Below are positions 9,902-58,112 of a DNA stretch of 64,000 nucleotides, in pieces (positions within the stretch are counted from its first letter, which is position 1; each line of letters opens with the position of its first letter). Under the pieces are notes generated by a model, which made no database searches, had not been told where the DNA came from, and saw only the letters and a program-made list of their open reading frames with translations. The position numbers and the translations under genes are program-made. The stretch is from IMG/VR virus record IMGVR_UViG_3300012931_000759, positions 276,393-340,392 of that record; one strand, 5' to 3'.

Positions 9902-9906
9902 CCATC

Positions 9907-10329: not shown

Positions 10330-10340
10330 GAGTAGAGCCA

Positions 10341-11228: not shown

Positions 11229-11238
11229 AGAGGAAAAA

Positions 11239-11466: not shown

Positions 11467-11487
11467 TCGCGTGCTGGGGGTAACGGG

Positions 11488-21263: not shown

Positions 21264-21265
21264 TT

Positions 21266-43793: not shown

Positions 43794-45080
43794 TTGACGA
43801 AACGATTCCTGATAGACACCAATGTTATTCTACATGACCCGAAAAGTATTGAAGTTTTCGCAGACAATGAAGTAATCATCCCCATTCCGGTGTTGGATGA
43901 ACTCGACCAGATCAAGGTCCGCCCTGATGAAAAGGGGCGGAATGCCCGGTCGGTCATCCGTCGTCTGGACGAGCTGCGCTCCCTCGGCTCCTTGAATGCC
44001 GGAGTGCGGCTCCCGTCCGGTTCCCTTATTCGCGTGGAGTTAAACCACCGCGCGCTTCCGCAGCCCCTCATCGACAGTGTTGACAACCGCCTGATTGGTA
44101 CAGCTCTAGGCCTGATACAAGAGAAGCCCGACGTGCCCCTTATCGTGGTGACCAAGGATATCAACCTGCGGGTAAAATGCGACGCTCTCGGCATCATTGC
44201 CCAGGACTATGAGCGCGACAAACTCGCCAAGATGCCGGATGCCCTTTACACCGGGTTCCGGACCCTCGATGTCCCCTCGTCTATCATCGACGAGCTGTAT
44301 GTCAAGAAAGTTGTGAATATCGAACTGCCCGACGCGCACATCAACGAGTTTGTGCTTCTACAGTCCGTTGACCGCGAGAAACACAGCGGCATTGGGCGCG
44401 TGGTCGTCCCCAACTGCCTGGTTCTCGTCACGCCGCCCAACGAGGCGTGGGGCATTAAGCCCCGCAACCTTGAGCAGAAGCTGGCGCTCTCGCTTCTCAT
44501 GGATCCCGAGATAAAGCTGGTAACCCTCGTGGGCCGCGCGGGATCAGGAAAGACCCTCATGGCTGTCGCTGCTGCGCTCCACCAGACCGTGGAGCGGAAG
44601 CTATTCCAGCGGGCGCTGCTGTCCCGACCAGTTCAGCCGCTTGGACGCGATATTGGATTCCTGCCCGGTACGGTCGAGGAAAAGCTCGCCCCCTGGCTGG
44701 CCGCCCTAAACGACAGCCTCGAACTCCTGTTTGCCAAGGATATGGAGATGCTGGAAATATACAAGCGACAGGGTATCCTACAGGTTGAGCCTCTCACATA
44801 CATCAGGGGACGCAGCATCCCCAACTCCTTTATGATCGTGGATGAAGCCCAGAATCTCACCCTCCATGAACTCAAGACTATCGTTACCCGCATCGGTGAG
44901 GGAAGCAAAATCATCCTGACGGGGGACCTTGAACAAATCGATAATCCTTTCGTGGACTTCGCCAGCAACGGACTCACCAACGCCATCGAGCGTCTCAAGG
45001 ACAAGGCCATCACAGGTCATGTCACTCTCCGCAAGTGTGAACGTTCCGAACTCGCCGAACTCGCCGCCGAAGTGCTCTGA
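43794..45080 (+). CDS. phoH: PhoH-family ATPase with N-terminal PIN domain (PhoH2/YlaK-like)
   Basis: IDTNVILHDP, VTKDINLRVK, GRAGSGKT, GFLPG..EKL.PW, YIRGRS, DEAQN, GDLEQID; GGAGG RBS and TTG start. Confidence 0.93.
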   Translation: MTKRFLIDTNVILHDPKSIEVFADNEVIIPIPVLDELDQIKVRPDEKGRNARSVIRRLDELRSLGSLNAGVRLPSGSLIRVELNHRALPQPLIDSVDNRLIGTALGLIQEKPDVPLIVVTKDINLRVKCDALGIIAQDYERDKLAKMPDALYTGFRTLDVPSSIIDELYVKKVVNIELPDAHINEFVLLQSVDREKHSGIGRVVVPNCLVLVTPPNEAWGIKPRNLEQKLALSLLMDPEIKLVTLVGRAGSGKTLMAVAAALHQTVERKLFQRALLSRPVQPLGRDIGFLPGTVEEKLAPWLAALNDSLELLFAKDMEMLEIYKRQGILQVEPLTYIRGRSIPNSFMIVDEAQNLTLHELKTIVTRIGEGSKIILTGDLEQIDNPFVDFASNGLTNAIERLKDKAITGHVTLRKCERSELAELAAEVL

Positions 45081-45110: not shown

Positions 45111-45187
45111 TTGTATGGGTTGTGCGGAAGTCTTCTAGGCCTCCGCGTAACCCGTCGCCATATGGCACGATTGGAATCGGAGACGCG

Positions 45188-46456
45188 ATGGCTACCCCCC
45201 CTTTCCTACGGAATGCGTATCCAGCCGATCTTGCAGCAGGCGTGGACACGTCCACATTGGTTTCTGCCGATGTGCTAGACGTAGACCAGGATCTTGTTCC
45301 CTCGAGCATCCTCGTTTACATCGATGGCGCGTTGGCATATGATGGTGCCTCCGGATTTGTCGCGCCGTTTTCCGGGACGGTATCCACAACAACCGTGGAT
45401 GGGTACGATGGCTACCATCTCTCTGTGGCCCGGTCAGTATCCTATTCCAATTCTTCGTGGATCATGGTGCGCGTGGTTGCCAGGGACACGGATGATCTTG
45501 TCCTGGATGAAATCTGGCAATTCTACACAGTTACGGTTCTTGCGGCCTTGCGACAAGGTCCGTACGAGATCTCGTTGGATGCGGAGTTCAGCGGTCCGAT
45601 GATGTTGTCGACCCTACAGGACGCATCGTACTTCTCCCTTGACAGGGCTTATGTACGGGCCTTGGATCCCTTGCCGCCCGGTAGCGCCGCACCCATGGGC
45701 GTGCGGCTTTGGGTGGAGGGTTTTCGTGGCGAACAGCCTTTTACGCTCACCATATCTCCTCTGGTTCGGGATGTTGCGGGCAATGTTCTTCCACCAAGTG
45801 GTCGCGTAGCCACCATTCTTCCGTTTCAGTCCTCGGCTTTCCTCTCCAACACGGATGGGTTTGTGCGTTCTTGGCACGAAAGCCGCCTTATCCTGAAGGA
45901 CGGCCTCCGGGCCTATCTTGCCGACACCCGTGGGATGGATGTGTTCGATATCGAGCACGGCCTCGGCAGGTCGGTGAAGTGGGCGCAGATATTGGACTCG
46001 TACGGGACAAGGGCGGCCTGTATCCTCGGGACGGCCAACTATGCTTTCGAAGATATGGAGCCCCCCTTCCTGGCCAACCGTTCTCCTACTCCAGGGGCCA
46101 CGGGCGTTCCACTAGGGACGAACATTCTGCTTTCAGTGGCCGATCTTGTGACGGCGGTCGAGGTGACGGCTGTGGCTGTCTATGTGAACGGACGGTTGGC
46201 ATTCGGTGGTGCGAGTGACGGTGGATGGGCGAACGGCTACGGCGGGCAGGTTTCAGTCGGCCACCAGATCATCGACATTCGGCTGTATCCTCCTGCGGGA
46301 GGGATTGTGGTTGGCACAAATACAGTGTCGGTCCTGGCCGCCGACCTTGTTGGGAATCTGCTGGATACCAGTTATACATTCACAGTGGGCGCCCCTCCGC
46401 CGACGGCTGGTGGATTCGGCACTGGCGGCTTTGGCACTGCGCCGTTCGGTGAGTAG
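45188..46456 (+). CDS. Putative virion protein with Ig-like repeats; paralog of 54505..56520
   Basis: PPFL.N..P repeats, DGYDGY, C-terminal GGFGTGGFGTAPFG. Confidence 0.6.
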   Translation: MATPPFLRNAYPADLAAGVDTSTLVSADVLDVDQDLVPSSILVYIDGALAYDGASGFVAPFSGTVSTTTVDGYDGYHLSVARSVSYSNSSWIMVRVVARDTDDLVLDEIWQFYTVTVLAALRQGPYEISLDAEFSGPMMLSTLQDASYFSLDRAYVRALDPLPPGSAAPMGVRLWVEGFRGEQPFTLTISPLVRDVAGNVLPPSGRVATILPFQSSAFLSNTDGFVRSWHESRLILKDGLRAYLADTRGMDVFDIEHGLGRSVKWAQILDSYGTRAACILGTANYAFEDMEPPFLANRSPTPGATGVPLGTNILLSVADLVTAVEVTAVAVYVNGRLAFGGASDGGWANGYGGQVSVGHQIIDIRLYPPAGGIVVGTNTVSVLAADLVGNLLDTSYTFTVGAPPPTAGGFGTGGFGTAPFGE

Positions 46457-46468
46457 GTAGCAAAAATC

Positions 46469-46485
46469 TGTCAATAATTCCGCAT
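46469..46485 (+). promoter_or_regulatory. Recurring motif, copy 4 (TGTCAATA-ATTCC-GCAT)
   Basis: Intergenic; CAAAAATCTGTCAATA matches the copy at 1031 in 15 of 16 nt. Confidence 0.55.
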
Positions 46486-46541
46486 CAGATGGGGATATAC
46501 GGTTCCGGATCGACCGGAAACGATTCCGTCAGGAGGCATAG

Positions 46542-48734
46542 ATGAGGGATAAGGGTTCCATGGGATTGACCCAAAGTTTCCGCCTGATCCGGTTCAAGGA
46601 CGTAGAGGGACTAGATGCGGAGGATCTTCTGGAGTATACTCCGGACGGCATTCAAGTCCGTTCAGAGATGCTCGGAAAAGTGGTCGAGGATGCTGTCCAT
46701 CGTAACAAATGGACCAGGCGGGGGCTGACCAGGATCCTTTATGAGTGTTTCAAAGGCCACAGCGGTAGTACCAGTCTATATCCGGCCGAGGTGACGTACG
46801 GGCAGCAGAATAACTGCTTCGCCGCGCTTTTTGTGGCGGCAGACGACGCTGGCACGGCGGCTAGCCGCTCCATATCTGGAAACGCCTTGGACACGATCAC
46901 GAAATCCAGCAACCAGATTTACCTAGTCAATGGAAATTTTACGGGTGCCGATGTAGGCAAACTGATCCAGATCACTGGTGGCACCCGGGAAGGCAATAAG
47001 GGTTTTCGGCTCATCACCCAGGTGCTGGGCGCAACCACTGTTGTGGTTACGGGATACGGCTCCTCCGGAGGTTTTGCCTCCAACGCCACGGAGAATTTTG
47101 GTGGCGTCGCCCTGTGGACCATTGTTCGTCCGGCGGATGCGCGTGTTGAATGGAATGAGTCGGACGGTCAGTTCAATACCAAGATTCCGCAGGGAAACGC
47201 TTCCGGCGCGGCTCTTTCTGAACGTGGAAGTAGGGCTTGTCTTATTTCTGATACGGCCGCAAGTACCTTTAGGCGAATGTCGATCGGATATGTTACAACT
47301 AATCCTTTCCGTGAAATTGAGTATGTTTTCTATGCCTTGGGTTCTTCTATCAGTAGGAACGTCACAGGCTCGCCCCTTGATAGTATTTTTGCTCAAACCA
47401 ATACAATTACATTGACCAATGCGAATTTTTCGCCGAGCGATGTTGGTAAGATTTTAAAAATTTCTGGCGCATCAAACTCTATAAATAATGGGCAGAGGCG
47501 TATTACTGTCTATGTAGATAATACACATGTTAAGACAGATGGACAGTATGCTATAGATGCCTATGAGAATTTTATGAGCGCGCAAGCGCAAGATGGTTTG
47601 TATTCTGCCTCGGCAGAAACCGGATATAAGGGTCTTGATTATTTGCCACTAAAGACCATAGGTCTTTCCGAGGGCATAGCCTGTGGATCAAGTGAGACCT
47701 CGAATCGCACTGGAATTCACTCTGTGCTCGGAATACAGCCAACATTACAAGGTGTGTGTGACCGCATCTATGTTCATGAGGGTACAGGCCTCCATAAATA
47801 TACTGGAGCTGAGACTCTTGGAACATTTGGTGATGGATACGTTCAGGACTCTTCTGTAGGTAATTTCACTGGTGATAAAATCTGTGATGGCTATGTACAG
47901 GGTGAAGGTTTAGATGGTTATGTAAACCTTGGAAGTAGGTGGATGTCTACGGCCGGTAGTAACCATATAATTGGACGTGTTTGGTCAACTACGACTGCGA
48001 AAAAACTCACAGGTATCCGCATAATTTTTCCGCTAGGTGAGAATAAGAATAATTGTCCGGATAGTTTCTTTATTCAGTATTTAGATGCCTCAACGGTTGG
48101 AGATATTCCTGGTAATTTACAGCCAGCAAATAATAGTTGCTGGACTACTATAGGAAGTCTTTATAGTAACCAGGGTGACACCATATTTTCCAATAGAGAG
48201 TATGGTGTAGAGTATACGTTTACCATTCCTGGCGGGGCCGATGCATATGGCATTAGATTATATAATCTGAATGCCTATTCCAATACTGCGGCTGTAGAAG
48301 TTGCGGAATTATATGCTTTTACAGCCGTACCTACTATTTTGATGACAGCGGATACGACGGACCAACTGCGCCTTGCGATTAAGGCTTCACCGTTGTCTGC
48401 TGATTTTCGGAACTTCTATCTTGGGTCATTATCTACAACTAGTGTCGCAACTTTGGTGAACACATTAAATGCACAACTTCGCGGCTATCAGATTGAGGCT
48501 GTGCGGTCCAATTTTGGATATTTATGGATTCGCGGTACTGTACAAGGCAATAATAGCTATTTGACATTAGATTCCATAGATAATGGATCTTCTGCAAACA
48601 CATTATTAGGTATGCCAGTATCAACTATCCGTCGGGCCAAGCAGGGTGCGACGCAGGTTATCATGAAATTGCCTTGTGACGCATTAGCTATCATCTACAG
48701 ATTTGCTATTTCGGGCGATTTACCCATGCCCTGA
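46542..48734 (+). CDS. Putative virion (tail/fiber) protein
   Basis: G/S/T/N-rich; internal repeat NF(T/S)..DVGK...I(T/S)G; three DGY; discoidin-like beta segment; AGGAGG RBS. Confidence 0.55.
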   Translation: MRDKGSMGLTQSFRLIRFKDVEGLDAEDLLEYTPDGIQVRSEMLGKVVEDAVHRNKWTRRGLTRILYECFKGHSGSTSLYPAEVTYGQQNNCFAALFVAADDAGTAASRSISGNALDTITKSSNQIYLVNGNFTGADVGKLIQITGGTREGNKGFRLITQVLGATTVVVTGYGSSGGFASNATENFGGVALWTIVRPADARVEWNESDGQFNTKIPQGNASGAALSERGSRACLISDTAASTFRRMSIGYVTTNPFREIEYVFYALGSSISRNVTGSPLDSIFAQTNTITLTNANFSPSDVGKILKISGASNSINNGQRRITVYVDNTHVKTDGQYAIDAYENFMSAQAQDGLYSASAETGYKGLDYLPLKTIGLSEGIACGSSETSNRTGIHSVLGIQPTLQGVCDRIYVHEGTGLHKYTGAETLGTFGDGYVQDSSVGNFTGDKICDGYVQGEGLDGYVNLGSRWMSTAGSNHIIGRVWSTTTAKKLTGIRIIFPLGENKNNCPDSFFIQYLDASTVGDIPGNLQPANNSCWTTIGSLYSNQGDTIFSNREYGVEYTFTIPGGADAYGIRLYNLNAYSNTAAVEVAELYAFTAVPTILMTADTTDQLRLAIKASPLSADFRNFYLGSLSTTSVATLVNTLNAQLRGYQIEAVRSNFGYLWIRGTVQGNNSYLTLDSIDNGSSANTLLGMPVSTIRRAKQGATQVIMKLPCDALAIIYRFAISGDLPMP

Positions 48735-48743
48735 GGTGAAATT

Positions 48744-49409
48744 ATGATAACCGGACATTTCGACCTTGTGCTTAAAAATGCCAAGGGACTCGTAGACGAG
48801 GATTTCCATGAAGCACATCAATATGGGCGACTACCTTATATGTTGGATAGTTTAAATACAGAACTTGAAGCCCATACCGACAATCTAGTAATGGACGGTG
48901 TTGTGCTATATCTGGGATATAATTTATTCCAGGTAACTGATACTGCAGGATCACAAATAAGTGTTTTGGCTACTAGTACTTCAGCATGGTTTAGTTGTAT
49001 TTGTTTGCTGACAACTGATAGTGAGCCGAATTACACATCTGAATGGAATAGAACCTCATTTACTTTTCAGACTCCAAGTAATGTTCCGGAATCAGCTAAC
49101 ACCTCGAGTGGCGGTAAGCGTTTTAAAGAAGATGCCTCAGAGGTACCGGATGTAAGGTCGGATCAAGGCGGCAGGGAGGCGATTTTTTACCGTGACCGGT
49201 GGTTATACCTTCCATCGCAGGGAATATCATCCAACATCCGAAGTATACAGGCACATATGGCAAACAATCAGGATGGTGGCAATAACTATTATTTTGGACG
49301 TTCTGCTAGGATTCGCATTAAAGATGCCGGCGGAAATCCTATCATCATCAGTAAGACTTCAAGCCAAGTATTGCTTGTTGAGTATCGACTGTCGTTTGTA
49401 AGTATCTGA
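48744..49409 (+). CDS. Hypothetical structural-type protein
   Basis: GAGG RBS; S/T/N-rich; cluster context. Confidence 0.55.
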   Translation: MITGHFDLVLKNAKGLVDEDFHEAHQYGRLPYMLDSLNTELEAHTDNLVMDGVVLYLGYNLFQVTDTAGSQISVLATSTSAWFSCICLLTTDSEPNYTSEWNRTSFTFQTPSNVPESANTSSGGKRFKEDASEVPDVRSDQGGREAIFYRDRWLYLPSQGISSNIRSIQAHMANNQDGGNNYYFGRSARIRIKDAGGNPIIISKTSSQVLLVEYRLSFVSI

Positions 49410-49454
49410 TCACGTAGATTTGTACGGAATCGTTTTGACGCGAAGGTACCCTAG

Positions 49455-51596
49455 ATGACAAGTCGCATTTCGATTTTTGTGAATGATTTCAATGACGATA
49501 TACAGGATCTTCCGGTTATGTCGGGGAATGGAGTTGTGTCTGAAACCGGTGGGGCGTTGGTTGTATCTTCGGATGGCAACCATAACATGAACTGGAATTC
49601 ATCAGGGCGCAACGGAAAATTACCTTATGTAACTGTCCCAATTATCTCAGAATTTACCAAGGTTTATTATGAGTTTACGGTAAAATCATGGACGACGACC
49701 AATCCAACTTATAGCCATTTTGTGGCAGCCTTGTTTCAGAGTGATGCCATTCTTTGGATTCTTGGATCCTCGGATGGTCTGAATTTTTGGGTGATGAAAA
49801 ATTGGGGAACCGCAAGCGCAAGTATTGCGACCACATTACCCCGAAAATTTCGTTTTGTGTGGGATAGATCTAATCCAATCTCGAGTACGTTGACTGTTCA
49901 ATACCAAGTTAGTGCCGACCCTTACATCTGGGCGGATATCGTCTCCAACCAGGCCATAAGTATGACGCCGATCGGGCTCGGTTTTGGTATCAAGAATACG
50001 AATACGTTTCCTGACTGTACAGTTCAATATGAGAATACCGAGATTTATGCCGAGAATGATCAATTCTCACTCTTGGATCAATGCGGTATTGAGGACTCTG
50101 TAGGAACTGGTACCGAAATTATTGGTACTGGCATTTTGTCGGTCGATAAACTACGCAATATTGACAATACTAATAGTGTTGAAGATGAGGGTTTTGCTCG
50201 TCTCGGCTTTGTACCAGCATACTGCCCATCAACCAATGATTTAGAGGGTCATCCATTTTTTTTGGATACGTTTGGTGCACCACGTCTACGAAGTGCCTTT
50301 TTATACGATGCGACACATGATCCTTGGAACAATCCATTTATTTACAATTTAGATGGCTATGGACGCGACGGTCACCATTATATTGGTGGTATACAACAAG
50401 TTACGATGGCTCCATGGGCCACGGAGGTCGTAAGTGCTGATCGCAGTTCGAGGTCTGACTTTCCCGTTCGCTCGCTTATTGTCATTTCTCAGAACGAACT
50501 AGTGATATTCGATCTGGACAATTGGCCGACATCAATTATGATGTGGATGCGTTTTAGGCTGGGCGACGCCTCCAATCAGTATCTGGTCAACAGGATCGTC
50601 GATTCGCTGCGTGCGGTCAGGATGCTCAATGGAACCCTGATGGTTGGATCCCAGGATAATGGTACAGAAAGGGGCGGGCTCTTCTGCGTGGATTTTAAGC
50701 GAACCGGAACGGACTTTTTTCTTCTTGTCCGTTCTGATGGATGGTGGAATGGAACCCTCGGGCGTAACATTACGCACCGCAACCAGACAGGTAACTGGGT
50801 CAGCCAAGGTACAGGCTTCAAGCTGGATAGCGAATACGTCCATTACATCGGTGCTGCCATCGACAACAGTCTGGCTAATCGCGAAAGGACGTGGGTAGTC
50901 GCTGGCTCAGAGGGTCTTATCAGGATTGTAGAAATCCTGGCTAATCAGCCGCAGTTTGACTACAAACCGGTTGGTACTTTGACTGGGCCTCTCAACGATC
51001 TCATCACAGGTTTGAAGTGTTCATTCTTCGACAGTGCCGGTTGGCTATGGCTTGGATGGGGATCCTATGTGTTTCGCGCGATAGCCGATTTCCGGGGAGG
51101 CGTAATAGTGATGGGCGACAATCTCGGCGGCTCCCCGGAGGGACGGCACCGTTATGTTCAACTCCTCCACCCATCGGAATTAGTTGTAGTCAAGTCTTTA
51201 ACGCAAGTTAACGAGAGCATTTACGCGGCCACAAATGTAGGTGTGTACAGAATCAACAGGTTTACCATGGAGGCCTATCTCTGCTATACGATTTCCGGAG
51301 GTTTAGGGGGTGGAATGCTGAATCGGCCACCTGCCGGTGAGTTGCTCGGCGGAGAAGCTAAATACACAGAATGGGCTAAGGGCTTTGTGGTCAACCATTC
51401 TGGAAAACCCATCGGATATCTTGCAGTGGCCTCGGCGCAGACTACATTCTCCTCATCCTTACCTACGCATGGTAGCGGTGCTGTGACCCTAATCCGAACA
51501 TATGACGATAGTGTGATAGACCGGCGGATACACACCGGGGTATCCTCTGGATTGACCGAAGACGGTGCCTGGTTCTTTATGCCTTTTGGCACATAA
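49455..51596 (+). CDS. Putative virion protein (lectin-like N-terminus plus propeller-like C-terminus); paralog of the next gene
   Basis: N-terminal ~200 aa aligns with 51604..54501 (NDF.D..QDLPV.SG.G.VSETGGALVVS...RNGKLPY...TTLPRKFRFVWD). Confidence 0.55.
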   Translation: MTSRISIFVNDFNDDIQDLPVMSGNGVVSETGGALVVSSDGNHNMNWNSSGRNGKLPYVTVPIISEFTKVYYEFTVKSWTTTNPTYSHFVAALFQSDAILWILGSSDGLNFWVMKNWGTASASIATTLPRKFRFVWDRSNPISSTLTVQYQVSADPYIWADIVSNQAISMTPIGLGFGIKNTNTFPDCTVQYENTEIYAENDQFSLLDQCGIEDSVGTGTEIIGTGILSVDKLRNIDNTNSVEDEGFARLGFVPAYCPSTNDLEGHPFFLDTFGAPRLRSAFLYDATHDPWNNPFIYNLDGYGRDGHHYIGGIQQVTMAPWATEVVSADRSSRSDFPVRSLIVISQNELVIFDLDNWPTSIMMWMRFRLGDASNQYLVNRIVDSLRAVRMLNGTLMVGSQDNGTERGGLFCVDFKRTGTDFFLLVRSDGWWNGTLGRNITHRNQTGNWVSQGTGFKLDSEYVHYIGAAIDNSLANRERTWVVAGSEGLIRIVEILANQPQFDYKPVGTLTGPLNDLITGLKCSFFDSAGWLWLGWGSYVFRAIADFRGGVIVMGDNLGGSPEGRHRYVQLLHPSELVVVKSLTQVNESIYAATNVGVYRINRFTMEAYLCYTISGGLGGGMLNRPPAGELLGGEAKYTEWAKGFVVNHSGKPIGYLAVASAQTTFSSSLPTHGSGAVTLIRTYDDSVIDRRIHTGVSSGLTEDGAWFFMPFGT

Positions 51597-51603
51597 GGCA
51601 ACA

Positions 51604-54501
51604 ATGACTGTCCAGCGCATTCCAATCTACATCAATGATTTCAGTGATGGCGTACAGGACCTTCCTGTTCTATCGGGAGCTGGTTCAGTTTCTGAAACGG
51701 GTGGCGCGCTGGTCGTGTCGGCTTCCACTAGTCAGAATCTGGATTGGTGGTCGACATATCGCAACGGGAAATTGCCCTATATACCTATCTCGCTCTCGGA
51801 CAACTACACTAGAATCTACTACGAATTCACCATTAGATCCTGGACGACAGCTAATACATCGGTAAGTGCGCTTGTTGTTGCTCTTTTCCAGAATGACATG
51901 ACCCTTCTCTGGTTCCTCTATAGCCAGGATGGTTTAACATTCAACGTCTATAAGAACTGGAACACCAGTTCCCTTGGCAGCATTGTAACAACGCTGCCCA
52001 GAAAGTTTCGATTTGTGTGGGATCCGTACGATTTTAAAGTGACCGTACAATGTCTGACCACCGAAAGCCCGCCTACATGGACAACTGTCATGGCAGCGCA
52101 GACCATAGGCATGACACCTATTGGCCTCGGATTCAGCATTAAGAACTGGAATACTTTTCCGGCGTGTACAGCCCAGTACGAGGACACCGAGATCTACGCC
52201 GAAAATTTCCAGATGCTCGACACTGATCCCTTTGGCGGTATTGAGGACTCGCTTGTGTTTCCATCCCCCGGACCATCCGTTGGTAGCGGAGGCGGTGGTA
52301 TCGGCCTAAATGGAGCGGGGCCAACCCAGGATGGATGGCAGAATAACGAGCCACTCCTTGGTTTCGAGGATGCTGGGAGGTTACTATCCGCAGGAGGCTC
52401 TCCGGATCCAATGTCGGGAATTCCGGACGGGGTGTTTATTCCGGAGCCAAGCGGGCTTGAGGACACGGTGTTCCTACCGAATGTCGGCGGGACGCCGGAT
52501 TGGGTGACGGGGATACCCGAGGGTTCGATTCCGTCGAATCCGAAAGGCGGCGCGGAGGATAGTAGTTATATCGAGGCAACGGCGCCAACATATGCGAAGG
52601 AAGTTAATGACGTAGATGGGCGTGAGACACTTAGTGGGAGTAGCGTCCGCCAGGTTTATTTGTACGACGCCTCGCAGGACCCATGGTATACGCATGGAGC
52701 AGACTACTACGGGGCCGCACAGAATGGGAAGTGTTATTACAACGGGGTAGAGTGCGGTCCCGGCGCGTTCAGTGTGTCCGGCATTTTCAACGATACGGCC
52801 TGGTCAAGGCCGGGAGGCTATCTGGATGCGATCTCGACTGCGAAGGATAGCGAAATCAGCGTCCCATTATCTGGCACGGTACGTTTCACCAGTTCGGCAG
52901 CAGGTGGGTTTTCGTATACGCAGATCCGGAGCACTCTACGATGGTTCTTGACCGGCGATTTCGATATCCAGCTCGACTATAACATCGTATCGGTCGGCTT
53001 TGGCCCCGGCGACGGCGGCATCATCTTCGAGGCTTACATCGATCCAAATAACTACTTCTACGTCCGCAGGAAAATATTCGGAGGTGGCCGGTACGATAAG
53101 GATGTGAGGAATAATGGTGGTTGGACCTCATATGCTTTTGTATCTACTAGCGACACAAGTGGCAGTATGCGGCTCACCCGTACCGGCTCTGTCGTGAGGT
53201 CATATTACTGGAACGGCGCATCGTGGACACAGATTGGCAGTGACTTCACCATGACCTACAACAGGCCAATGTGGGTGAATGTTGGATACTCATTCAACCT
53301 GATCCCGACAGTGACGGTGCTTGAGGTGAGCAGATTCATAATCAATTCCGGAGCCACTACAAATCTGATCGGCTGGGCACGGGAGGTGGCCGGAACCTAC
53401 CGGGGCACCTTGGCCGCTTTTCCCCCGCGTGCCCTTCTAGCCTCGTCCGGAAACGGGTTCGACATTCTTGACGCGGACACACAGAAGCTCTGGATGAGCT
53501 TTCGCAGTGCGACAAGTAATCTTGTGGGCGGAGATGCCAACTTCTACATCCGGCAGATTGTGGCCAAGGACGGTGTGCTGTTTGTGGCCTACCGCAACTT
53601 TGACTCACTGGGAACGGCCAATGGATGGGTGGCCTGGATCGATTTTACGGTGGACTCGGTACGCCTTGTGCGCGGACCGACCCAAGGTGACGGCGGGTTG
53701 ATCTACAATGTCGAATTGTCAACGGGCATTTGGCCGAAAGACGCCTCCAACGGATGTATCGCTTTCAGGAATTCTGCGCGGGGTTATATGGCCTCGTTCA
53801 ACGCCGACTGGGCTATGCAGCATTCGCGCGGCAATTGGTGCGACCTATTACACGATTCTGGGTTTCAGTACCGCGCGCTGGCGAACAACGGCGGCGCGAT
53901 GATACAGAAATGGAAGAGATGGCGATTCGAGGGATTTGGTAATCAGAACTGGAGCACTCCGGACAAGGGTATCTCGACCAAGACCACTGCGATGAAATGG
54001 TTACTGTTTAATCCGACTACCAAGGCTCTCTATTACCATGATCGGAGCCAGCTCCATGTTGCCAATTTCGCGACTTGGAGCGCTGTTCTAAGCGGTGCTG
54101 GTGGTACTTGGATCGAAGACAATAGCTATAATCTGTCAGGAAGCGTCGATTCCAACACTGCAGTTGGCGAGGCCCAGGATAAAATGATGCTATACGATGG
54201 ATATCTATGGTATCCGCGCGTAAATGGGGTATACAGGATTGATCCAGGAATCGGCATCTCCATGCTGTATTATGGCATGGTCGGATCAGGCGCCGTACAG
54301 GAAATCCTACCTGACTATACTACGGTGGCTTCGATCCACCAGTCAAGTGACGGGACAACAGCTTTTCTAGCTATAGGGATCCAGTTCATCCGTGACAAGC
54401 AATCGTGTGACCAGGTTGTGCTTGTGGATATTTCGACAGACACAATATATGGTGTAGGGGCCATTACTAAGGGCCGTACAACCTATGCGATGGCGGTGTG
54501 A
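51604..54501 (+). CDS. Putative virion/receptor-binding protein
   Basis: Paralogous N-terminus; Gx-ED linker repeats; LTGDFDIQ...MRLTRTGSVVRSYY concanavalin-like insert. Confidence 0.55.
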   Translation: MTVQRIPIYINDFSDGVQDLPVLSGAGSVSETGGALVVSASTSQNLDWWSTYRNGKLPYIPISLSDNYTRIYYEFTIRSWTTANTSVSALVVALFQNDMTLLWFLYSQDGLTFNVYKNWNTSSLGSIVTTLPRKFRFVWDPYDFKVTVQCLTTESPPTWTTVMAAQTIGMTPIGLGFSIKNWNTFPACTAQYEDTEIYAENFQMLDTDPFGGIEDSLVFPSPGPSVGSGGGGIGLNGAGPTQDGWQNNEPLLGFEDAGRLLSAGGSPDPMSGIPDGVFIPEPSGLEDTVFLPNVGGTPDWVTGIPEGSIPSNPKGGAEDSSYIEATAPTYAKEVNDVDGRETLSGSSVRQVYLYDASQDPWYTHGADYYGAAQNGKCYYNGVECGPGAFSVSGIFNDTAWSRPGGYLDAISTAKDSEISVPLSGTVRFTSSAAGGFSYTQIRSTLRWFLTGDFDIQLDYNIVSVGFGPGDGGIIFEAYIDPNNYFYVRRKIFGGGRYDKDVRNNGGWTSYAFVSTSDTSGSMRLTRTGSVVRSYYWNGASWTQIGSDFTMTYNRPMWVNVGYSFNLIPTVTVLEVSRFIINSGATTNLIGWAREVAGTYRGTLAAFPPRALLASSGNGFDILDADTQKLWMSFRSATSNLVGGDANFYIRQIVAKDGVLFVAYRNFDSLGTANGWVAWIDFTVDSVRLVRGPTQGDGGLIYNVELSTGIWPKDASNGCIAFRNSARGYMASFNADWAMQHSRGNWCDLLHDSGFQYRALANNGGAMIQKWKRWRFEGFGNQNWSTPDKGISTKTTAMKWLLFNPTTKALYYHDRSQLHVANFATWSAVLSGAGGTWIEDNSYNLSGSVDSNTAVGEAQDKMMLYDGYLWYPRVNGVYRIDPGIGISMLYYGMVGSGAVQEILPDYTTVASIHQSSDGTTAFLAIGIQFIRDKQSCDQVVLVDISTDTIYGVGAITKGRTTYAMAV

Positions 54502-54504
54502 TAT

Positions 54505-56520
54505 ATGGGACGGGCGACCATCGCGGCATCATATTTCTGGGGCATCGTCAATCATACCATCATACAAGGAGATGGGATGGTTAGTCCCTCTCTGTCCTCT
54601 GTGACGGTGGGGGATCCTAATACGGTTCGTGTGGTATTTGATCGCACTATGTTACAGGACGGATATCTGTTACGCCTTGACAACTACGCCATCACAAAGA
54701 CGGCCGATCCGACAATCGCCTTGGCGGTTTTCCGCGTGCTGTCCGTCGCCAACCGACCGGACGCAGTCGATTTGATTACACAGGACCAGGAGGCGGTCGC
54801 CTACAACTTAGTTGTGGGAATGGCTCCAGTCAGCGAACCTATCAGGGACGCTTACGGAAACCCCTTTACGCCTAGTTACATGGGTTTTACTGGCCAGGCG
54901 CCCCCGGCGACATCCTACAGTAGCCTCTATATGTTCTCAGGGTTTGAGGCCGGAATGGATGCCAAGACGGAAGAGAGTTGGGACCCCGATCTGGATCCCC
55001 CGTATCTTGCACACCTAGATCCAGCCGACGGATATATCAATGTCGACGCGAATCCGCAGATACATCTGGATATCCTGGATGCGATTAGCGGGGTTAACGA
55101 ACTGTCGGTGTGGATCAAGATAAATGGGATCTATGCTTGGCTGCTCGGCATGGAGCAGCCCGGATTCACCGTGATGCGATCCACAGTCCCCATGGGCTAC
55201 CGATACGAGATCAAACGCTCGCTTACGTTCGGCCCACATCAGTTGGTGTTGATCGAGGTGTATGCCGAAGATCTGGTCGGCATCCCCAACATTCTTTCGA
55301 CAAGTTACTCATTTACCACAATTGGGAGCAGCCATACCCCATTCCTACGTAATTTCGATCCCACTCCTGAAATCGGCGGTGTGCCACCGTCGTACAGCTA
55401 TTCGTTCGATCTGCTCGACGACTACGACGATGTAAACCCTGCCACGATCCTATTCTATGTCAATGGTGCCCAGGTTTACAGCGGAGCCACGGGACTTTGG
55501 ACGGCGCCATATGACGGATACATAGGGCGCGTGGAGAATATCGATGGATATGACGGATACCATGTGCGGATCGACCATCCATCCTTCCCCAATTCTTCAA
55601 GAGTCAACATCCGAGTTGTAGCTTTCGATTTCCATGCCACAATGTTAGACCAGACCTACGGGATCTGGATTGCGCCGATGGCTTTTGCGCCGACCATTGA
55701 TCCGTACGAGATTACCCTTCGCCTGTCTTTCAGTGGTGCGATGGATTCCACAGTTGTTCTTGATGCTTCGCTGTTCCGCCTTTCGGGCGGCGCTTATGTG
55801 CGGAAGGTGGATGCTCTTTCGCAATCGGAGCTACAACTTTGGGTTGAGCGCATGCTGGGACCTGGACCGTTCACCCTGACGGTGTCCAGCCTTGTTGCTG
55901 ATAGTCATGGGGGACATCCAGTTGGGGACATTGTTCTGGCGGTTCCCGTATTCCATTCGGATGCCCTGTTCTCCAACAACGACGGGTTGCTGCGGTCGTG
56001 GCATGAGAATCGGCTTGTTCTAAGGGATGGACAGCGGGTGTATTTTGCTGGCCTGCGTGGAATTGATGTTCTGGACATTAGACTCGGAATGACGGCCGCC
56101 AACCGTTGGGCTCAGGTACTCGATGCGTACGGCGTGAATGCGATGTGCCTATTGGGCTCAATGGACGGATATGATTTTGCTACTGGGGCGCCCCCTGCTC
56201 TAGTAAACCCCGATCCTGCCCCGGACGTTGTCGGTGTTCCGACGGACACGGATATCCTATTCTCGGTCACCGAGACGATTATCGCAGTCGAGACGACATC
56301 GTTGGCGATCTATGTCGGAACCGCCCTCGTGTTCAGTGGCATAGGTGGCTGGGCCGGACACTGGGGTGGGCAGATCACAGTTCGCTCACGGGCGCTCGAT
56401 GTCGAATTGTTCCCGCCAGAGCCGTTCGAGCCGGATTCGAGGATTCAAGTGAGGGTCATCGCCAGCGACCTGCTCGGCAACTTGTTAGACAGATCCTACA
56501 CTTTTACGACAGCTGTATAG
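54505..56520 (+). CDS. Putative virion protein with Ig-like repeats
   Basis: C-terminal ~400 aa aligns with 45188..46456 (PYEI.L..FSG.M, RSWHE.RL, WAQ.LD.YG, DL.GNLLD.SYTFT); six DGY. Confidence 0.6.
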   Translation: MGRATIAASYFWGIVNHTIIQGDGMVSPSLSSVTVGDPNTVRVVFDRTMLQDGYLLRLDNYAITKTADPTIALAVFRVLSVANRPDAVDLITQDQEAVAYNLVVGMAPVSEPIRDAYGNPFTPSYMGFTGQAPPATSYSSLYMFSGFEAGMDAKTEESWDPDLDPPYLAHLDPADGYINVDANPQIHLDILDAISGVNELSVWIKINGIYAWLLGMEQPGFTVMRSTVPMGYRYEIKRSLTFGPHQLVLIEVYAEDLVGIPNILSTSYSFTTIGSSHTPFLRNFDPTPEIGGVPPSYSYSFDLLDDYDDVNPATILFYVNGAQVYSGATGLWTAPYDGYIGRVENIDGYDGYHVRIDHPSFPNSSRVNIRVVAFDFHATMLDQTYGIWIAPMAFAPTIDPYEITLRLSFSGAMDSTVVLDASLFRLSGGAYVRKVDALSQSELQLWVERMLGPGPFTLTVSSLVADSHGGHPVGDIVLAVPVFHSDALFSNNDGLLRSWHENRLVLRDGQRVYFAGLRGIDVLDIRLGMTAANRWAQVLDAYGVNAMCLLGSMDGYDFATGAPPALVNPDPAPDVVGVPTDTDILFSVTETIIAVETTSLAIYVGTALVFSGIGGWAGHWGGQITVRSRALDVELFPPEPFEPDSRIQVRVIASDLLGNLLDRSYTFTTAV

Positions 56521-56530
56521 GGGACCAATA

Positions 56531-57727
56531 ATGCCGATCACGATTCAGAACCAGAGCCCAGCCAGCGGCGCCTCGGGCGTTTCCACGACCGTCGATGTCC
56601 AGATCGACGTCGTGAGGGCGGCGCCCGTATTACTTTTGGCCGAGATCCAGATATACATCGAGGGCGATTGGGCTTTCGATGGCGGGAGCGCGACGCCTTT
56701 TCATGGTCAATACGCCGGGCCCGGCTCATTAGTGTCCCCTGTGGCGGACGGATACCGCATCATCCTGGATCGTCTTACCCCGTATCGCGAGGAGTTCGTC
56801 AACGTACAGGTGAGGCAGACCGGACAGGGTCCAGTCGGCGGCTGGTCATTTCGCGTGGGCAACAGCCCGGTTAGCGATTTCTACTTCTCCGACGGCTACG
56901 GAATCCGCAGGCTACACATGAGGCAGCTGGTGGGCGAATGGAAACCGTACGAGAACGCAAACACCGACGGCTACGCTATGCCGATCATCCTATCTGCGGC
57001 GGTCACTCCGGGCTGGCCGAGCGACAATGTGCGCACAATGACCGGGGCTCGCCCCGACGGATACCTTTTTCTCGTGTCCAGCACGGAAGATGGCGTGGCT
57101 GTCACGCAGAACGAGACGGGCGGTCTGCGAATTTATTCAGATGGCTATGACACGCTGTCTGCGCACATGACCGCGCAGGGAACTTTGTACCTGATCAACA
57201 GGACATTGAATAGGCTGGAGGTGTACTATGGAGCCGATTACAGGACACCAAACCGCCCGCCTGATTTCTTCTACGACACATCTTCCACGCCAACGCTGCT
57301 CGATGGAAATTTGTCGGCCCTCCATATTGCTGAGGGAAGGTCGACCGTTCTCGTGGGAGGGACGCGATTGTACGTCGGCTGCTCGCGATATCCCGACGGA
57401 AGCGGGGGCGGCATCACGAAGATCGAGACGTACGACGCCCAGATCGACGGCTATTCGGAAGGCCATGACGGCTACGGTCGTTCGTATACATATGGTATCG
57501 CTGGCAGCCCGACGGATTTTCCGATCCTCGGGGGCAGTGTGCCGGATGTAGTGGCGGTCGATTCCAACGAAACTGAGGGAATCCTGTTTGTTGCGACCAA
57601 CGACGGCACAGAGGTCGGCGGAGGTCTTTCGCAGATGTCGATCTCCCGAAATGTCCTGCTCCTGTTCATGACCAAGGAAACCGGCCAACTACCCTCCAAT
57701 GTGATCAAGGATATTGCAGCTCCATAA
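56531..57727 (+). CDS. Putative virion protein, DGY-rich
   Basis: NQSPA Ig-like start, propeller-like repeats (PSDNVR, LPSNVI); seven DGY. Confidence 0.55.
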   Translation: MPITIQNQSPASGASGVSTTVDVQIDVVRAAPVLLLAEIQIYIEGDWAFDGGSATPFHGQYAGPGSLVSPVADGYRIILDRLTPYREEFVNVQVRQTGQGPVGGWSFRVGNSPVSDFYFSDGYGIRRLHMRQLVGEWKPYENANTDGYAMPIILSAAVTPGWPSDNVRTMTGARPDGYLFLVSSTEDGVAVTQNETGGLRIYSDGYDTLSAHMTAQGTLYLINRTLNRLEVYYGADYRTPNRPPDFFYDTSSTPTLLDGNLSALHIAEGRSTVLVGGTRLYVGCSRYPDGSGGGITKIETYDAQIDGYSEGHDGYGRSYTYGIAGSPTDFPILGGSVPDVVAVDSNETEGILFVATNDGTEVGGGLSQMSISRNVLLLFMTKETGQLPSNVIKDIAAP

Positions 57728-57824
57728 AAACAAATGGATGCGCCGGTGTGCGGGATGCCAGCCATGGCAATGTCGACCATTTCCGCCCCGGATGATTATC
57801 CGAGGATAGCAGAGGGGAAAACAG

Positions 57825-58112
57825 ATGGACAATGGCGAGGCGGCCAAGCTGGCCGAGTCGGTGCTGACTCGGAAGATGGAACTAGAAAGGCAGGGGCTCA
57901 AACCGCGCCTCGTCCTGCTTGGCAACAAGGCCTTCAAACTCCTGGAGGCGGATTGGCTGGAGGCTGCCGAGGCGCTCCCTTGGGGCGATTCACTCGCCTA
58001 CGAGCTGCGCATGCGCCGCGCTCAGCGTGGTACGATTTTTCTCGGCGACGGCAGCATATTCGGCCTGTGGGTGGTGAAAGTCGAAACGATCGAAGGGTTC
58101 CAGGTGTTCTGA
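57825..58112 (+). CDS. Hypothetical protein
   Basis: GAGG RBS; TGATG coupling with map. Confidence 0.6.
   Translation: MDNGEAAKLAESVLTRKMELERQGLKPRLVLLGNKAFKLLEADWLEAAEALPWGDSLAYELRMRRAQRGTIFLGDGSIFGLWVVKVETIEGFQVF

What the first reader, a model, noticed from the sequence alone, without database searches (positions are those of the whole stretch)
45188..57727. Asp-Gly-Tyr (DGY) motif strongly enriched across the putative virion proteins
Seen (manual count): 20 DGY in about 4100 aa (2, 3, 0, 1, 1, 6 and 7 per gene, including DGYDGY twice). I noticed only one elsewhere in the window, in the helicase; a rough composition estimate predicts 1-2. Codons vary (GAC/GAT, GGC/GGA, TAC/TAT), so the repeat is at protein level, and it occurs in non-homologous contexts. 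Inference: DGY is a shared short linear motif, for example a modification sequon (Tyr O-glycosylation is known from some S-layers), a metal-binding turn, or a docking, cleavage or cross-linking site. A sequon for the 1-24 kb glycosylation cluster would make a complete phage virion-glycosylation system.
Basis: partly seen in the sequence, partly recalled or inferred. Interest (0 to 1): 0.82.

Follow-up and report, generated by a model that had tools for sequence, protein, structure and literature searches.

The report
DGY hairpin motif in phage fibre proteins
The Asp-Gly-Tyr excess is real and turns out to mark a whole family of adhesin-like proteins in a clade of huge phages, but it looks like a beta-hairpin turn that builds the fold, not a glycosylation tag.

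Summary
The count is exact. There are 20 DGY in seven adjacent + strand genes (4,155 aa) against 1.3 expected, and 1 in the other 16,669 aa. All 20 are in frame and use mixed codons.

The signal is much wider than the window. In 145 non-redundant relatives DGY occurs 740 times against 44 expected, and it is the top tripeptide. DGF occurs only 33 times. Five related huge-phage loci carry DGY in the same cassette downstream of PhoH, with almost none (2 occurrences) in their flanking genes. Seventy-nine unrelated phage loci show no DGY-rich ORF.

Fifteen of the window's 20 sites lie in three conserved proteins built from a Big_5-type Ig-like domain and a beta-propeller. In 492 copies of that domain one column carries D/N/G, then G, then Y/F. 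That is the residue pattern of a type I' beta-turn followed by an aromatic. Two AlphaFold2 models place DGY at strand-turn-strand junctions. The Tyr is in phase with core-facing hydrophobic residues.

Best reading: a structural hairpin signature of a phage-specific domain family, in a variable tail-fibre or adhesin cassette.

A Tyr-modification sequon is not excluded. The glycosyltransferase cluster co-occurs across the clade. One relative carries a sulfotransferase of the Pfam family Sulfotransfer_3, weakly like protein-tyrosine sulfotransferases (TPSTs), inside its cassette.

The parts
45122..46456 (+). Cassette gene 1. The ATG at 45188 is probably the true start. Architecture: Ig-like domain, linker, Ig-like domain. 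It is a paralogue of the C-terminal 390 aa of the gene at 54505. Two DGY (nt 45398, 45407) form a DGYDGY.
   Evidence: 44% identity to g54505 residues 279-668; Ig HMM hits at aa 26-136 and 314-422, i.e. nt 45197-45529 and 46061-46387; orthologues in L002 and L003; ATG at 45188.
46542..48734 (+). Variable cassette gene, 730 aa, with no homologue in the relatives' cassettes. Three DGY within 30 residues (nt 47832, 47886, 47913), in a short internal DGYV repeat.
   Evidence: The atlas gives only leads, to discoidin-type (F5/8 type C) carbohydrate-binding phage proteins.
48744..49409 (+). Variable cassette gene, 221 aa, no DGY and no family hit. It lies in a low-GC patch (42.5% at 48-50 kb).
49455..51596 (+). 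Variable cassette gene, 713 aa. Its N-terminal 216 aa are 57% identical to the N-terminus of the next gene, which suggests a shared anchor with different distal parts. One DGY (nt 50352).
51565..54501 (+). Variable cassette gene, 978 aa, with a C-terminal beta-propeller (about aa 617-978). One DGY (nt 54196), followed by a hydrophobic strand.
   Evidence: and 103 (atlas structure match to YncE/NHL propellers, TM 0.77 normalised by the target).
54505..56520 (+). Conserved cassette gene, 671 aa. It has an N-terminal Big_5-like domain, three Ig-like domains of the DGY subfamily (nt 54997-55320, 55339-55662, 56191-56511) and a short LVIVD-like segment. Six DGY (nt 54658, 55027, 55513, 55543, 55552, 56164).
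   Evidence: Big_5, 24.4 bits against cut-off 23.6; the DGYDGY core is invariant in 10 homologues; model: strand 337-346, turn D347-G348, strand 349-357, with the 10-residue pLDDT block means for 331-360 at 84-94.
56531..57727 (+). Conserved cassette gene, 398 aa. Ig-like domain (nt 56534-56854) followed by a beta-propeller (nt 56858-57724). Seven DGY (nt 56747, 56891, 56966, 57056, 57140, 57446, 57467).
   Evidence: model, pLDDT 73; propeller fold matches; five sites keep DGY in 10-14 of 15 homologues; 244 relatives.
43794..45080 (+). PIN-PhoH gene. It is the conserved upstream boundary of the cassette in all related phages examined.
57734..60565 (+). Conserved downstream boundary: M24 peptidase, thymidylate kinase and an amidase with a peptidoglycan-binding domain, followed by ThyX at 60565-62031. 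No DGY.
1812..23951 (+). It holds GT4, GT2 (three genes), a GT47-like gene, methyltransferases, FdtA, a DegT aminotransferase, a nucleotidyltransferase and four epimerase/dehydratase genes. Two GIY-YIG homing endonuclease genes interrupt it. No link to DGY has been shown.

Best explanation
DGY is a structural beta-hairpin signature. Asp-Gly makes a tight two-residue (type I'-like) turn. The Tyr opens the next beta-strand with its ring on the hydrophobic face, capping the edge of the fold.

It is the hallmark of a phage-specific subfamily of Big_5-type Ig-like domains. The same idiom is reused at other hairpins of that domain, in the blades and loops of the attached beta-propeller, and in further beta-rich proteins of the same gene cassette.

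The cassette lies between PhoH and the M24 peptidase / thymidylate kinase / amidase / ThyX genes in a clade of uncultured huge phages (300-450 kb). Its gene content varies from 3 to 12 or more genes. It encodes fibre- or adhesin-like proteins, with tandem Ig arrays of up to 24 domains, lectin-like domains and propeller tips. These are most likely tail fibres or receptor-binding proteins.

The excess in the window has two causes. One is domain duplication and paralogy: 15 of 20 sites lie in three related proteins. The other is strong purifying selection on the motif.

Shown: the enrichment, its conservation, its position at predicted turns, the residue pattern at the main column, and the cassette synteny. 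Inferred: the exact turn type, burial of the Tyr ring, and the virion role.
For: 1. Domain hallmark. An HMM found 492 copies of the Ig-like domain. They hold 495 DGY: 42% of copies have DGY at column 70 and 19% at column 67. At least ten further columns carry it at 1-7% each, against about 0.04% expected per column. The Gly and Tyr of that site are invariant among copies only 22-42% identical.

2. Turn signature. Columns 70-72 read DGY 205, NGY 49, GGY 26, NGF 18, DGF 12, GGF 8. That is D/N/G then G, the classic residue preference of a type I' turn (textbook knowledge), followed by an aromatic.

3. Models. In g54505, strand 337-346, a two-residue loop D347-G348 and strand 349-357 are predicted, with the 10-residue pLDDT block means for 331-360 at 84-94. 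In g56531, D73, D121, D176 and D204 lie at strand-loop-strand junctions.

4. Periodicity over 734 sites. The hydrophobic fraction is 0.17 at +1, 0.54 at +2 and 0.48 at +4, against a background of 0.35. The Tyr therefore shares a face with core-type residues.

5. Propeller context. DGY followed by a hydrophobic strand recurs about once per blade in g56531. Fold matches are to YVTN, NHL, lactonase and PQQ propellers.

6. Family-wide enrichment of 16.6-fold. Related loci L002, L003, L013, L014, L162 and L163 carry the motif in the cassette, while their flanking genes hold only 2 DGY in all, both in L013. Seventy-nine control phage loci show a ratio of 1.6 and no ORF with 3 or more DGY.

7. Fibre or adhesin nature. 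Fold matches are to tandem Ig, cadherin, SbsC and SiiE. Relatives carry Laminin_G_3 domains and hit PHROG tail and virion-structural families.
Against: A purely structural idiom does not obviously explain four things.

- Tyr is preferred over Phe about 22:1 family-wide (740 DGY against 33 DGF) although Phe is nearly as common overall.
- Asp and Tyr are coupled at the main column. Y:F is 205:12 with Asp and 106:47 without (odds ratio 7.6, P = 9e-11). Subfamily structure could also cause this.
- Tandem forms (DGYDGY, and DGYxDGYDGYG) are highly conserved in three unrelated contexts. One is a loop that AlphaFold2 models poorly (residues 304-314 of g56531).
- The motif is confined to one cassette, and ordinary phage proteins lack it.

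Limits of the evidence. No model coordinates were available, so burial, phi/psi angles and the hydrogen-bond partner of the Tyr hydroxyl are inferred, not measured. Model confidence is moderate (pLDDT 72-73). Other virion genes of this phage lie outside the window and were not examined.
Confidence: 0.6

Rival explanations
1. DGY tips form a functional surface instead of a purely structural element, or as well as one. Asp, Gly and Tyr at the loop ends of the Ig-like domains and on the propeller would bind a host-surface ligand (a polysaccharide) or Ca2+. Alternatively they would mediate contacts between domains or subunits that stiffen the fibre, as Ca2+ sites do in cadherins and in the SiiE adhesin.
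For: DGY recurs at several different hairpin ends of the same domain (columns 29/30, 44/50, 56/59, 67/70, 93/96). The fold resembles Ca2+-rigidified tandem-Ig adhesins (cadherins, SiiE). There is a strong Tyr-over-Phe and Asp-over-Asn preference. Conserved tandem DGY loops are modelled with low confidence, as interface or ligand loops often are. The cassette proteins look like receptor-binding proteins, with lectin-like domains, propellers and variable gene content.
Against: No ligand or metal site could be tested. There is no upstream D-x-D pattern like that of DxDxDG calcium loops (logo). The Tyr is in phase with core-type residues. The sites are conserved across proteins that otherwise diverge strongly, whereas specificity-determining residues usually vary.
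Confidence: 0.2
2. DGY is a Tyr O-glycosylation sequon, and the glycosyltransferases and nucleotide-sugar enzymes encoded at 1.8-24 kb use it to glycosylate the fibre proteins.
For: A large glycan cluster is present. Its 756-aa GT4 protein is found on every large contig that carries the DGY cassette: 340, 441, 318, 305 and 301 kb and two contigs of about 97 kb. The Tyr preference is strict. Short sequons with an acidic residue at position -2 or -1 are known in bacteria, for example PglB D/E-X-N-X-S/T and Bacteroidota D-S/T-hydrophobic (from established knowledge). Tyr-linked S-layer glycans exist (PMC2943079).
Against: The co-occurrence is among close relatives only, so it is not independent evidence. 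Homologues of the glycosyltransferase are far more numerous and widespread than the cassette families (more than 80 near-full-length hits and many N-terminal-domain hits in other huge phages). The cluster lies 20-50 kb from the cassette. The motif sits in tight hairpins of folded domains with the Tyr on the hydrophobic face. At the main column about 27% of the 487 occupied domain copies lack Tyr. PMC2943079 contains neither 'consensus' nor 'sequon' and gives no motif for Tyr-linked S-layer glycans.
Confidence: 0.07
3. DGY tyrosines are sites of another covalent Tyr modification, most concretely O-sulfation by a phage sulfotransferase that weakly resembles protein-tyrosine sulfotransferases (TPSTs). 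Oxidative cross-linking is another possibility.
For: In the related 318/452-kb phage a 257-aa Sulfotransfer_3 gene lies inside the DGY cassette and itself has no DGY. Its best matches among solved structures, though weak (E = 0.02-0.06), are human TPST2 and TPST1, and it has a similar PAPS-binding loop. Tyrosine sulfation sites typically have nearby acidic and turn-forming residues (established knowledge). Asp is at -2 in every site and at +1 in 21% of sites.
Against: No homologue was found in the window or in any other fetched cassette. The metagenome scan returned only identical copies. The Sulfotransfer_3 family also contains carbohydrate sulfotransferases, and the only NCBIfam hit is a weak one to NoeE. 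Known TPST substrates are unstructured segments, typically with Asp at position -1. The structural evidence listed above also counts against this reading.
Confidence: 0.06
4. The excess is an artefact of composition, of recent duplication, or of a repeat at DNA level.
For: Asp, Gly and Tyr are somewhat elevated in these proteins. Two of the genes are paralogues and the Ig-like domain is repeated.
Against: Composition expects 1.3 and a Markov null 4.6. Seventeen independent sites remain after collapsing paralogous ones (P = 8e-14). Codons vary and the motif occurs only in frame 0. The same excess is seen in 145 representatives at 50% identity or less.
Confidence: 0.01

Closest known systems
Type I' two-residue beta-hairpin turns (Asn-Gly, Asp-Gly, Gly-Gly) flanked by an aromatic residue
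   Same: A two-residue loop is predicted between antiparallel strands. The residue pattern at the main column is D/N/G then G. An aromatic residue starts the next strand.
   Different: In proteins generally Asn-Gly is at least as common as Asp-Gly, and no particular following residue is required. Here Asp outnumbers Asn 11:1 and Tyr outnumbers Phe 22:1 across the family. The motif also occurs in tandem.
Asp-box (S-x-D-x-G-x-T-W), the hairpin motif of sialidase-type propellers and other folds
   Same: It is a short Asp/Gly/aromatic hairpin motif. It recurs in propeller blades and in unrelated folds, and it is structural, not catalytic.
   Different: The spacing and residues differ: D-x-G-x-x-W against D-G-Y. 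DGY is not an Asp-box by sequence.
Tyrosine corner of Greek-key beta-sandwiches (consensus L-x-P-G-x-Y)
   Same: A Tyr-specific structural motif (Phe is not tolerated) at the start of a strand next to a Gly-containing connection in Ig/FN3-like sandwiches. This would explain the Tyr-over-Phe preference.
   Different: In a classic corner Gly is at Y-2 with Pro at Y-3. Here Gly is at Y-1 and Asp at Y-2. The defining hydroxyl-to-backbone hydrogen bond could not be checked.
Big_5 (PF13205) bacterial Ig-like domains in phage tail fibres and S-layer or adhesin proteins
   Same: Pfam Big_5 hits (precomputed on homologues). The same overall consensus, ending in D-x-x-G-N ... Y-x-F-x-T. Tandem arrays, with fold matches to SbsC, cadherin and SiiE.
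   Different: This is a distinct subfamily. Its best-conserved feature is DGY (or DGYDGY) at the hairpin before the I-D-P strand. So far it has been seen only in one clade of huge phages.
Glycosylated mycobacteriophage virions (Freeman et al. 2023, cited in PMC12619734)
   Same: Phage-encoded glycosyltransferases together with structural proteins.
   Different: In those phages glycans are attached at the C-termini of capsid and tail-tube subunits. Here no modification has been shown, and the candidate residue is a Tyr inside folded hairpins.

Membership tests
Big_5 (PF13205) Ig-like domain | Match to the Pfam model above its gathering score | tested here: met
   g54505 residues 562-669 score 24.4 bits against a cut-off of 23.6. 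g45122 is below the cut-off at 19.1 bits. Several homologues carry a precomputed PF13205 hit. This is marginal membership of a divergent subfamily.
Big_5 (PF13205) Ig-like domain | Beta-sandwich fold occurring in tandem arrays | tested here: met
   The AlphaFold2 models are all-beta, with seven to nine strands per roughly 105-aa unit. Foldseek matches tandem Ig, cadherin and SbsC chains at E = 1e-7 to 1e-10. Giant relatives contain 15-24 tandem copies.
Type I' beta-turn hairpin | Two-residue loop between adjacent antiparallel strands, with D/N/G at the first loop position and G at the second | tested here: met
   DSSP on the model gives E337-346, loop D347-G348, E349-357. Column 70-72 counts are DGY 205, NGY 49, GGY 26, NGF 18, DGF 12, GGF 8.
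Type I' beta-turn hairpin | Left-handed backbone phi/psi angles at both loop residues | not testable with these tools
   The structure tool does not return model coordinates.
Asp-box | Sequence pattern S/T-x-D-x-G-x-T/x-W/F | tested here: not met
   Over 740 sites Gly directly follows Asp and the aromatic directly follows Gly. There is no Ser/Thr preference at -2 (logo).
Tyrosine corner | Gly at Y-2, Pro or polyproline conformation at Y-3, hydrophobic residue at Y-5 (L-x-P-G-x-Y) | tested here: not met
   Gly is at Y-1 and Asp at Y-2. No Pro enrichment appears upstream.
Tyrosine corner | Tyr hydroxyl hydrogen-bonded to the backbone of the preceding connection | not testable with these tools
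   No coordinates. The Tyr-over-Phe preference is compatible with it but does not show it.
DxDxDG calcium-binding loop | Asp or Asn at positions -4 and -2 relative to the D-G | tested here: not met
   Position -2 is mostly G, I or Y, and position -4 mostly V, T or S. The six commonest residues at -2 do not include Asp, and Asp is 0.09 at -4, which is background level.
Protein glycosylation sequon | Acceptor residue in an exposed, flexible segment and obligatory for recognition | tested here: inconclusive
   The sites are at predicted hairpin turns with Tyr in phase with hydrophobic residues. Tyr is absent from about 27% of the 487 occupied domain copies at the main column. Solvent exposure could not be computed.
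Protein glycosylation sequon | Demonstrated glycan on the residue and a cognate transferase | not testable with these tools
   Needs mass spectrometry or an enzyme assay. Only clade-level co-occurrence with the glycosyltransferase was seen.
Tyrosine O-sulfation site (TPST-type) | Acidic residues next to Tyr, in an unstructured segment | tested here: inconclusive
   Asp is at -2 in every site and at +1 in 21%. But the sites are predicted to lie in folded hairpins.
Tyrosine O-sulfation site (TPST-type) | A protein-tyrosine sulfotransferase encoded by the same genome | tested here: not met
   None in the 64-kb window (tblastn). A Sulfotransfer_3 gene lies in the cassette of one relative only. The other 276 kb of this phage could not be read.
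YVTN/NHL/LVIVD-type beta-propeller (C-terminal part of g56531) | Propeller fold with 40-50-aa blades | tested here: inconclusive
   Foldseek and atlas matches to PQQ, NHL, lactonase and YVTN propellers have TM 0.33-0.50. There is no Pfam repeat hit. Parts of the model have low confidence.

The most novel reading that the evidence does not exclude
DGY (more generally D-[GA]-Y) is the recognition site of a virion tyrosine-modification system in a clade of huge phages. The candidate enzymes are the sulfotransferase, weakly similar to protein-tyrosine sulfotransferases, found inside one relative's cassette, or the clade-wide glycosyltransferase cluster. Dozens of tyrosines on tail fibres or adhesins would then be covalently decorated. 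That would be a new kind of phage surface chemistry with a three-residue sequon.
Probability: 0.12. Interest if true: 0.85.

Novelty: new variant of a known kind. Interest (0 to 1): 0.45.

Why it matters
The motif is a simple and very specific marker. Three or more DGY per protein was never seen in 360,000 aa of control phage proteins. It picks out a previously undescribed family of Ig-like and propeller fibre proteins, and the variable cassette that probably sets host recognition, in a clade of uncultured 300-450 kb phages. These proteins have no PHROG assignment and no match in the cultured-phage collection.

It defines a new Big_5-type domain subfamily that could be modelled and used for annotation.

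If the strict Tyr requirement turns out to reflect a modification or ligand contact and not a hairpin hydrogen bond, the same data would point to a new phage surface-modification system with an unusually simple sequon.

Tried and rejected
1. DNA-level repeat or out-of-frame signal: rejected. All sites are in frame 0 with mixed codons.

2. Composition or dipeptide bias: rejected.

3. Similarity to cultured phages: none for the region by megablast or for two of the proteins by tblastn. Only PrkA finds distant Thermus-phage hits.

4. PHROGs, Pfam and NCBIfam on the seven proteins: only weak Big_5 hits.

5. Sequence search of solved structures with profiles A1 and A2: nothing useful.

6. Literature: the phrase 'DGY motif' is absent from the library. 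'Asp-Gly-Tyr' gives nothing relevant. The 'moraphage' paper (PMC12619734) mentions none of this window's marker genes (PrkA, SpoVR, tubulin), so it gave no link to this clade.

7. PhoH as an anchor for finding related cassettes: it returned mostly unrelated phages, which I used as a control set instead.

8. A search with the broad domain alignment A5 failed for lack of a conserved stretch. The narrower alignment A6 worked.

9. Walking the 318-kb relative: gene tables were returned but no DNA.

10. g48744 as a sulfotransferase homologue: no similarity.

11. Asp-box, classic tyrosine corner and DxDxDG loop: the sequence patterns are not met.

12. Solvent exposure of the tyrosines could not be computed, because model coordinates are not returned.


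Full report
**Setting**

The window is the last 64 kb of a 340,392-bp IMG/VR contig. Nearly all genes are on the + strand. Pfam identifies:
- a tubulin/PhuZ-like protein, UvsW- and DnaB-type helicases, and a PrkA / DUF444 / SpoVR trio;
- a sigma factor, an intein-bearing ribonucleotide reductase, and PIN-PhoH;
- an M24 peptidase, thymidylate kinase, an amidase with a peptidoglycan-binding domain, and ThyX.

This is an uncultured huge phage. The DGY region has no DNA match, and two of its proteins no translated match, in 50,697 phage records.

**The observation**

I translated the seven + strand ORFs between 45122 and 57727. They hold 2, 3, 0, 1, 1, 6 and 7 DGY, 20 in 4,155 aa, exactly as reported. 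There is one DGY in the remaining 16,669 aa, where 2.5 are expected.

- Per-protein composition expects 1.31. None of 20,000 shuffles exceeded 8.
- A first-order Markov expectation is 4.6 (P = 9e-8).
- DGY is the most enriched tripeptide by twelve orders of magnitude in P.
- Twenty of 32 xGY and 20 of 53 DGx are DGY.
- All 20 are in frame 0, and Asp and Tyr codons are evenly mixed.

Two qualifications apply. First, g45122 is a paralogue of g54505 residues 279-668 (44% identity), so the two DGYDGY are one site. After collapsing homologous positions 17 independent sites remain (P = 8e-14). Second, 15 of the 20 sites are in g45122, g54505 and g56531.

**The signal extends far beyond the window**

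Homologues of g56531 (19 found) and g54505 (11 found) keep the sites. Five of the seven g56531 sites are DGY in 10-14 of 15 sequences. Most homologues carry extra copies, including an inserted DGY-x-D-x-DGY and a triple DGY-C-DGY-DGY. The DGYDGY core of g54505 is invariant.

A profile search of 1.84 billion cluster representatives found 244 relatives. The 145 new representatives (99,502 aa, 50% identity or less to each other) contain 740 DGY against 44 expected. That is 16.6-fold and again the top tripeptide.
- Variants are rare: DGF 33, NGY 68, EGY 20.
- DAY is also enriched, 209 occurrences (6.5-fold), so the motif is D-[GA]-Y.
- Single proteins of 2,320-3,630 aa carry 33-53 copies.

**The cassette**

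In six related loci the order sigma factor, ribonucleotide reductase, PhoH, cassette is conserved. Where the downstream flank was seen, the cassette is followed by M24 peptidase, thymidylate kinase, amidase and ThyX. The loci are L002 (a 305,730-bp NCBI assembly), L003, L013, L014, L162 and L163.

The cassette varies from 3 to at least 12 genes.

| Locus | DGY in cassette genes | DGY in flanking genes |
|---|---|---|
| L002 | 16 | 0 |
| L003 | 13 | 0 |
| L013 | at least 72 | 1, plus 1 in PhoH |
| L014 | 55 | 0 |
| L162 | 35 (all 12 ORFs of 150 aa or more in the 20-kb locus belong to the cassette) | none in the locus |
| L163 | 17 | 0 |

In the window, g46542, g48744, g49455 and g51565 have no counterpart in the relatives' cassettes. 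They sit partly in a low-GC patch. In L013 and L014 a further paralogous family of about 700 aa has its own conserved DGY sites, including a DGYDGYG.

As a control, 79 unrelated phage loci fetched through PhoH (360,265 aa) have 88 DGY against 54 expected, and no ORF has three or more.

**What the proteins are**

- g54505 has a marginal Big_5 hit. Its model is a string of beta-sandwiches that matches tandem Ig, cadherin, SbsC S-layer, PrgB and SiiE adhesin structures.
- g56531 is an Ig-like domain followed by a beta-propeller. Fold matches are to PQQ, NHL, lactonase and YVTN propellers at TM 0.33-0.50.
- g51565 ends in a propeller.
- g49455 and g51565 share a 57%-identical N-terminus. That is the usual layout of alternative fibres on one anchor.
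- Relatives add Laminin_G_3 lectin-like domains and 15-24 tandem Ig-like domains.
- Some cassette members in relatives hit PHROG 'tail protein' (E = 1e-19) and 'virion structural protein' families.

A tail-fibre or adhesin role is therefore likely, but it is inferred.

**Anatomy of the motif**

An HMM seeded on g54505 residues 277-392 collected 492 domain copies with 112 match columns. They contain 495 DGY.
- 42% of copies have DGY at column 70 and 19% at column 67. Column 67 is an extra DGY occupying the three columns immediately before column 70; 124 of the 492 copies have gaps there.
- Smaller numbers occur at columns 93/96, 56/59, 44/50, 29/30, 12 and others. Each is far above the roughly 0.2 occurrences per column expected by chance.
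- The Gly and Tyr of column 70-72 are invariant in copies only 22-42% identical.
- At that column the triplets are DGY 205, NGY 49, GGY 26, NGF 18, DGF 12, GGF 8. That is D/N/G followed by G, the textbook preference of a type I' two-residue turn, then an aromatic.

In the g54505 model the segment is strand 337-346, loop D347-G348, strand 349-357, with the 10-residue pLDDT block means for 331-360 at 84-94. In g56531, four of the seven DGY sit at strand-loop-strand junctions. One (146) lies in the low-confidence segment 114-154 and two (306, 313) in a low-confidence loop.

Over 734 sites the residue after Tyr is strongly polar (hydrophobic fraction 0.17). Positions +2 and +4 are hydrophobic (0.54 and 0.48, against a background of 0.35). 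The Tyr therefore lies on the hydrophobic face of the strand it starts.

In the propeller, DGY followed by a hydrophobic strand recurs about once per blade.

**Interpretation**

These data fit a structural hairpin idiom. An Asp-Gly tight turn is followed by a Tyr that caps the core. The idiom is inherited through domain duplication and reused at other hairpins.

Several things are not fully explained.
- Tyr outnumbers Phe 22:1 across the family, although at the hallmark column Phe reaches 13%.
- Asp and Tyr are statistically coupled (odds ratio 7.6, P = 9e-11).
- Tandem DGY forms are conserved in three unrelated contexts.
- The motif is confined to one cassette.

A hydroxyl-dependent hydrogen bond of the tyrosine-corner type would account for the first two. 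A shared ligand, Ca2+ or interface role, or a modification, would account for all four.

**The glycosylation hypothesis**

The cluster at 1.8-24 kb is real. It holds GT4, three GT2 genes, a GT47-like gene, methyltransferases, FdtA, DegT, a nucleotidyltransferase and four epimerase/dehydratase genes.

Its 756-aa GT4 protein is on every large contig known to carry the cassette. But it has over 80 near-full-length homologues, many with inteins, against 19 and 11 for the cassette families. It lies 20-50 kb from the cassette. The co-occurring phages are close relatives. So the co-occurrence does not discriminate between hypotheses.

The Tyr-linked S-layer glycan review I consulted contains neither 'consensus' nor 'sequon' and gives no motif.

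**An unexpected lead**

In the 318/452-kb relative a Sulfotransfer_3 gene (59 bits against a cut-off of 27) lies inside the cassette. Its best matches among solved structures, though weak, are human protein-tyrosine sulfotransferases. No homologue is present in the window or in the other cassettes. The family also includes carbohydrate sulfotransferases. I keep Tyr modification as a low-probability, high-interest alternative.

**Verdict**

The most likely explanation is a structural beta-hairpin signature of a new phage-specific Big_5-type Ig-like and propeller protein family in a variable fibre cassette (confidence 0.6). A functional surface (0.2) and Tyr modification (about 0.13 combined) remain open. 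It is a new variant of a known kind.

Noticed in passing
L162:15785-16558 (identical in L164 and L165, both at 10001-10771): A 257-aa Sulfotransfer_3 protein lies inside the DGY cassette of a related 318/452-kb phage. It has a PAPS-binding loop like that of protein-tyrosine sulfotransferases, and its best (weak) matches among solved structures are human TPST2 and TPST1. A Kelch-like 344-aa gene sits next to it. Neither gene has any DGY.
   Followed up: partly
window 30516-33752: PrkA is 1,078 aa here against 646 aa in a relative. About 460 residues are inserted between the AAA and C-terminal domains, and the insert ends in ...HN followed by T. This is probably an intein with a homing endonuclease.
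   Followed up: partly
window 38185-42591: The ribonucleotide reductase large subunit (1,468 aa) carries an intein with a LAGLIDADG endonuclease. In relatives, inteins also sit in PhoH and in the 756-aa glycosyltransferase, but not in this window's copies.
   Followed up: partly
window 1812-23951: This is a large nucleotide-sugar and glycosyltransferase cluster. The genes present (FdtA + DegT + nucleotidyltransferase + 4,6-dehydratase) suggest a dTDP-3-amino-3,6-dideoxyhexose pathway, and the GDP-mannose dehydratase and epimerase genes a GDP-deoxyhexose pathway. Two GIY-YIG homing endonuclease genes (15050-16030, 16881-18089) interrupt it. The two-domain GT4 protein is conserved in many huge phages. 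Its target (virion, DNA or host envelope) is unknown.
   Followed up: partly
window 48001-52000: GC drops to 42.5-48.6% against about 55% elsewhere. The patch covers g48744 and g49455, which have no counterparts in related cassettes. This suggests recent acquisition or exchange of fibre modules.
   Followed up: no
window 23908-25398: A tubulin/FtsZ-family GTPase (PhuZ-like) lies next to the replication genes.
   Followed up: no
window 57734-58870: The M24 peptidase has a Gly-rich N-terminal extension of about 125 aa (13.5% Gly overall) that the 248-251-aa orthologues in related phages lack.
   Followed up: no
window 30516-36966 and L014:1-2649: The PrkA / DUF444 / SpoVR trio, a bacterial stress and sporulation-associated module, is conserved in this phage clade. 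Its nearest cultured counterparts are in Thermus phages (37% identity).
   Followed up: no
L013:20924-27368 and L014:17231-26002: These loci carry three to four tandem paralogues of a roughly 700-aa family with a shared N-terminus, part of which hits PHROG virion-structural families. The family has its own conserved DGY sites. It is absent from the window.
   Followed up: partly
window 45398-57475 (the 20 DGY codon triplets): Within DGY the Gly codon is GGA or GGC in 18 of 20 cases, against 60% of all Gly codons in these genes. This is a mild codon-context bias and is unexplained.
   Followed up: no
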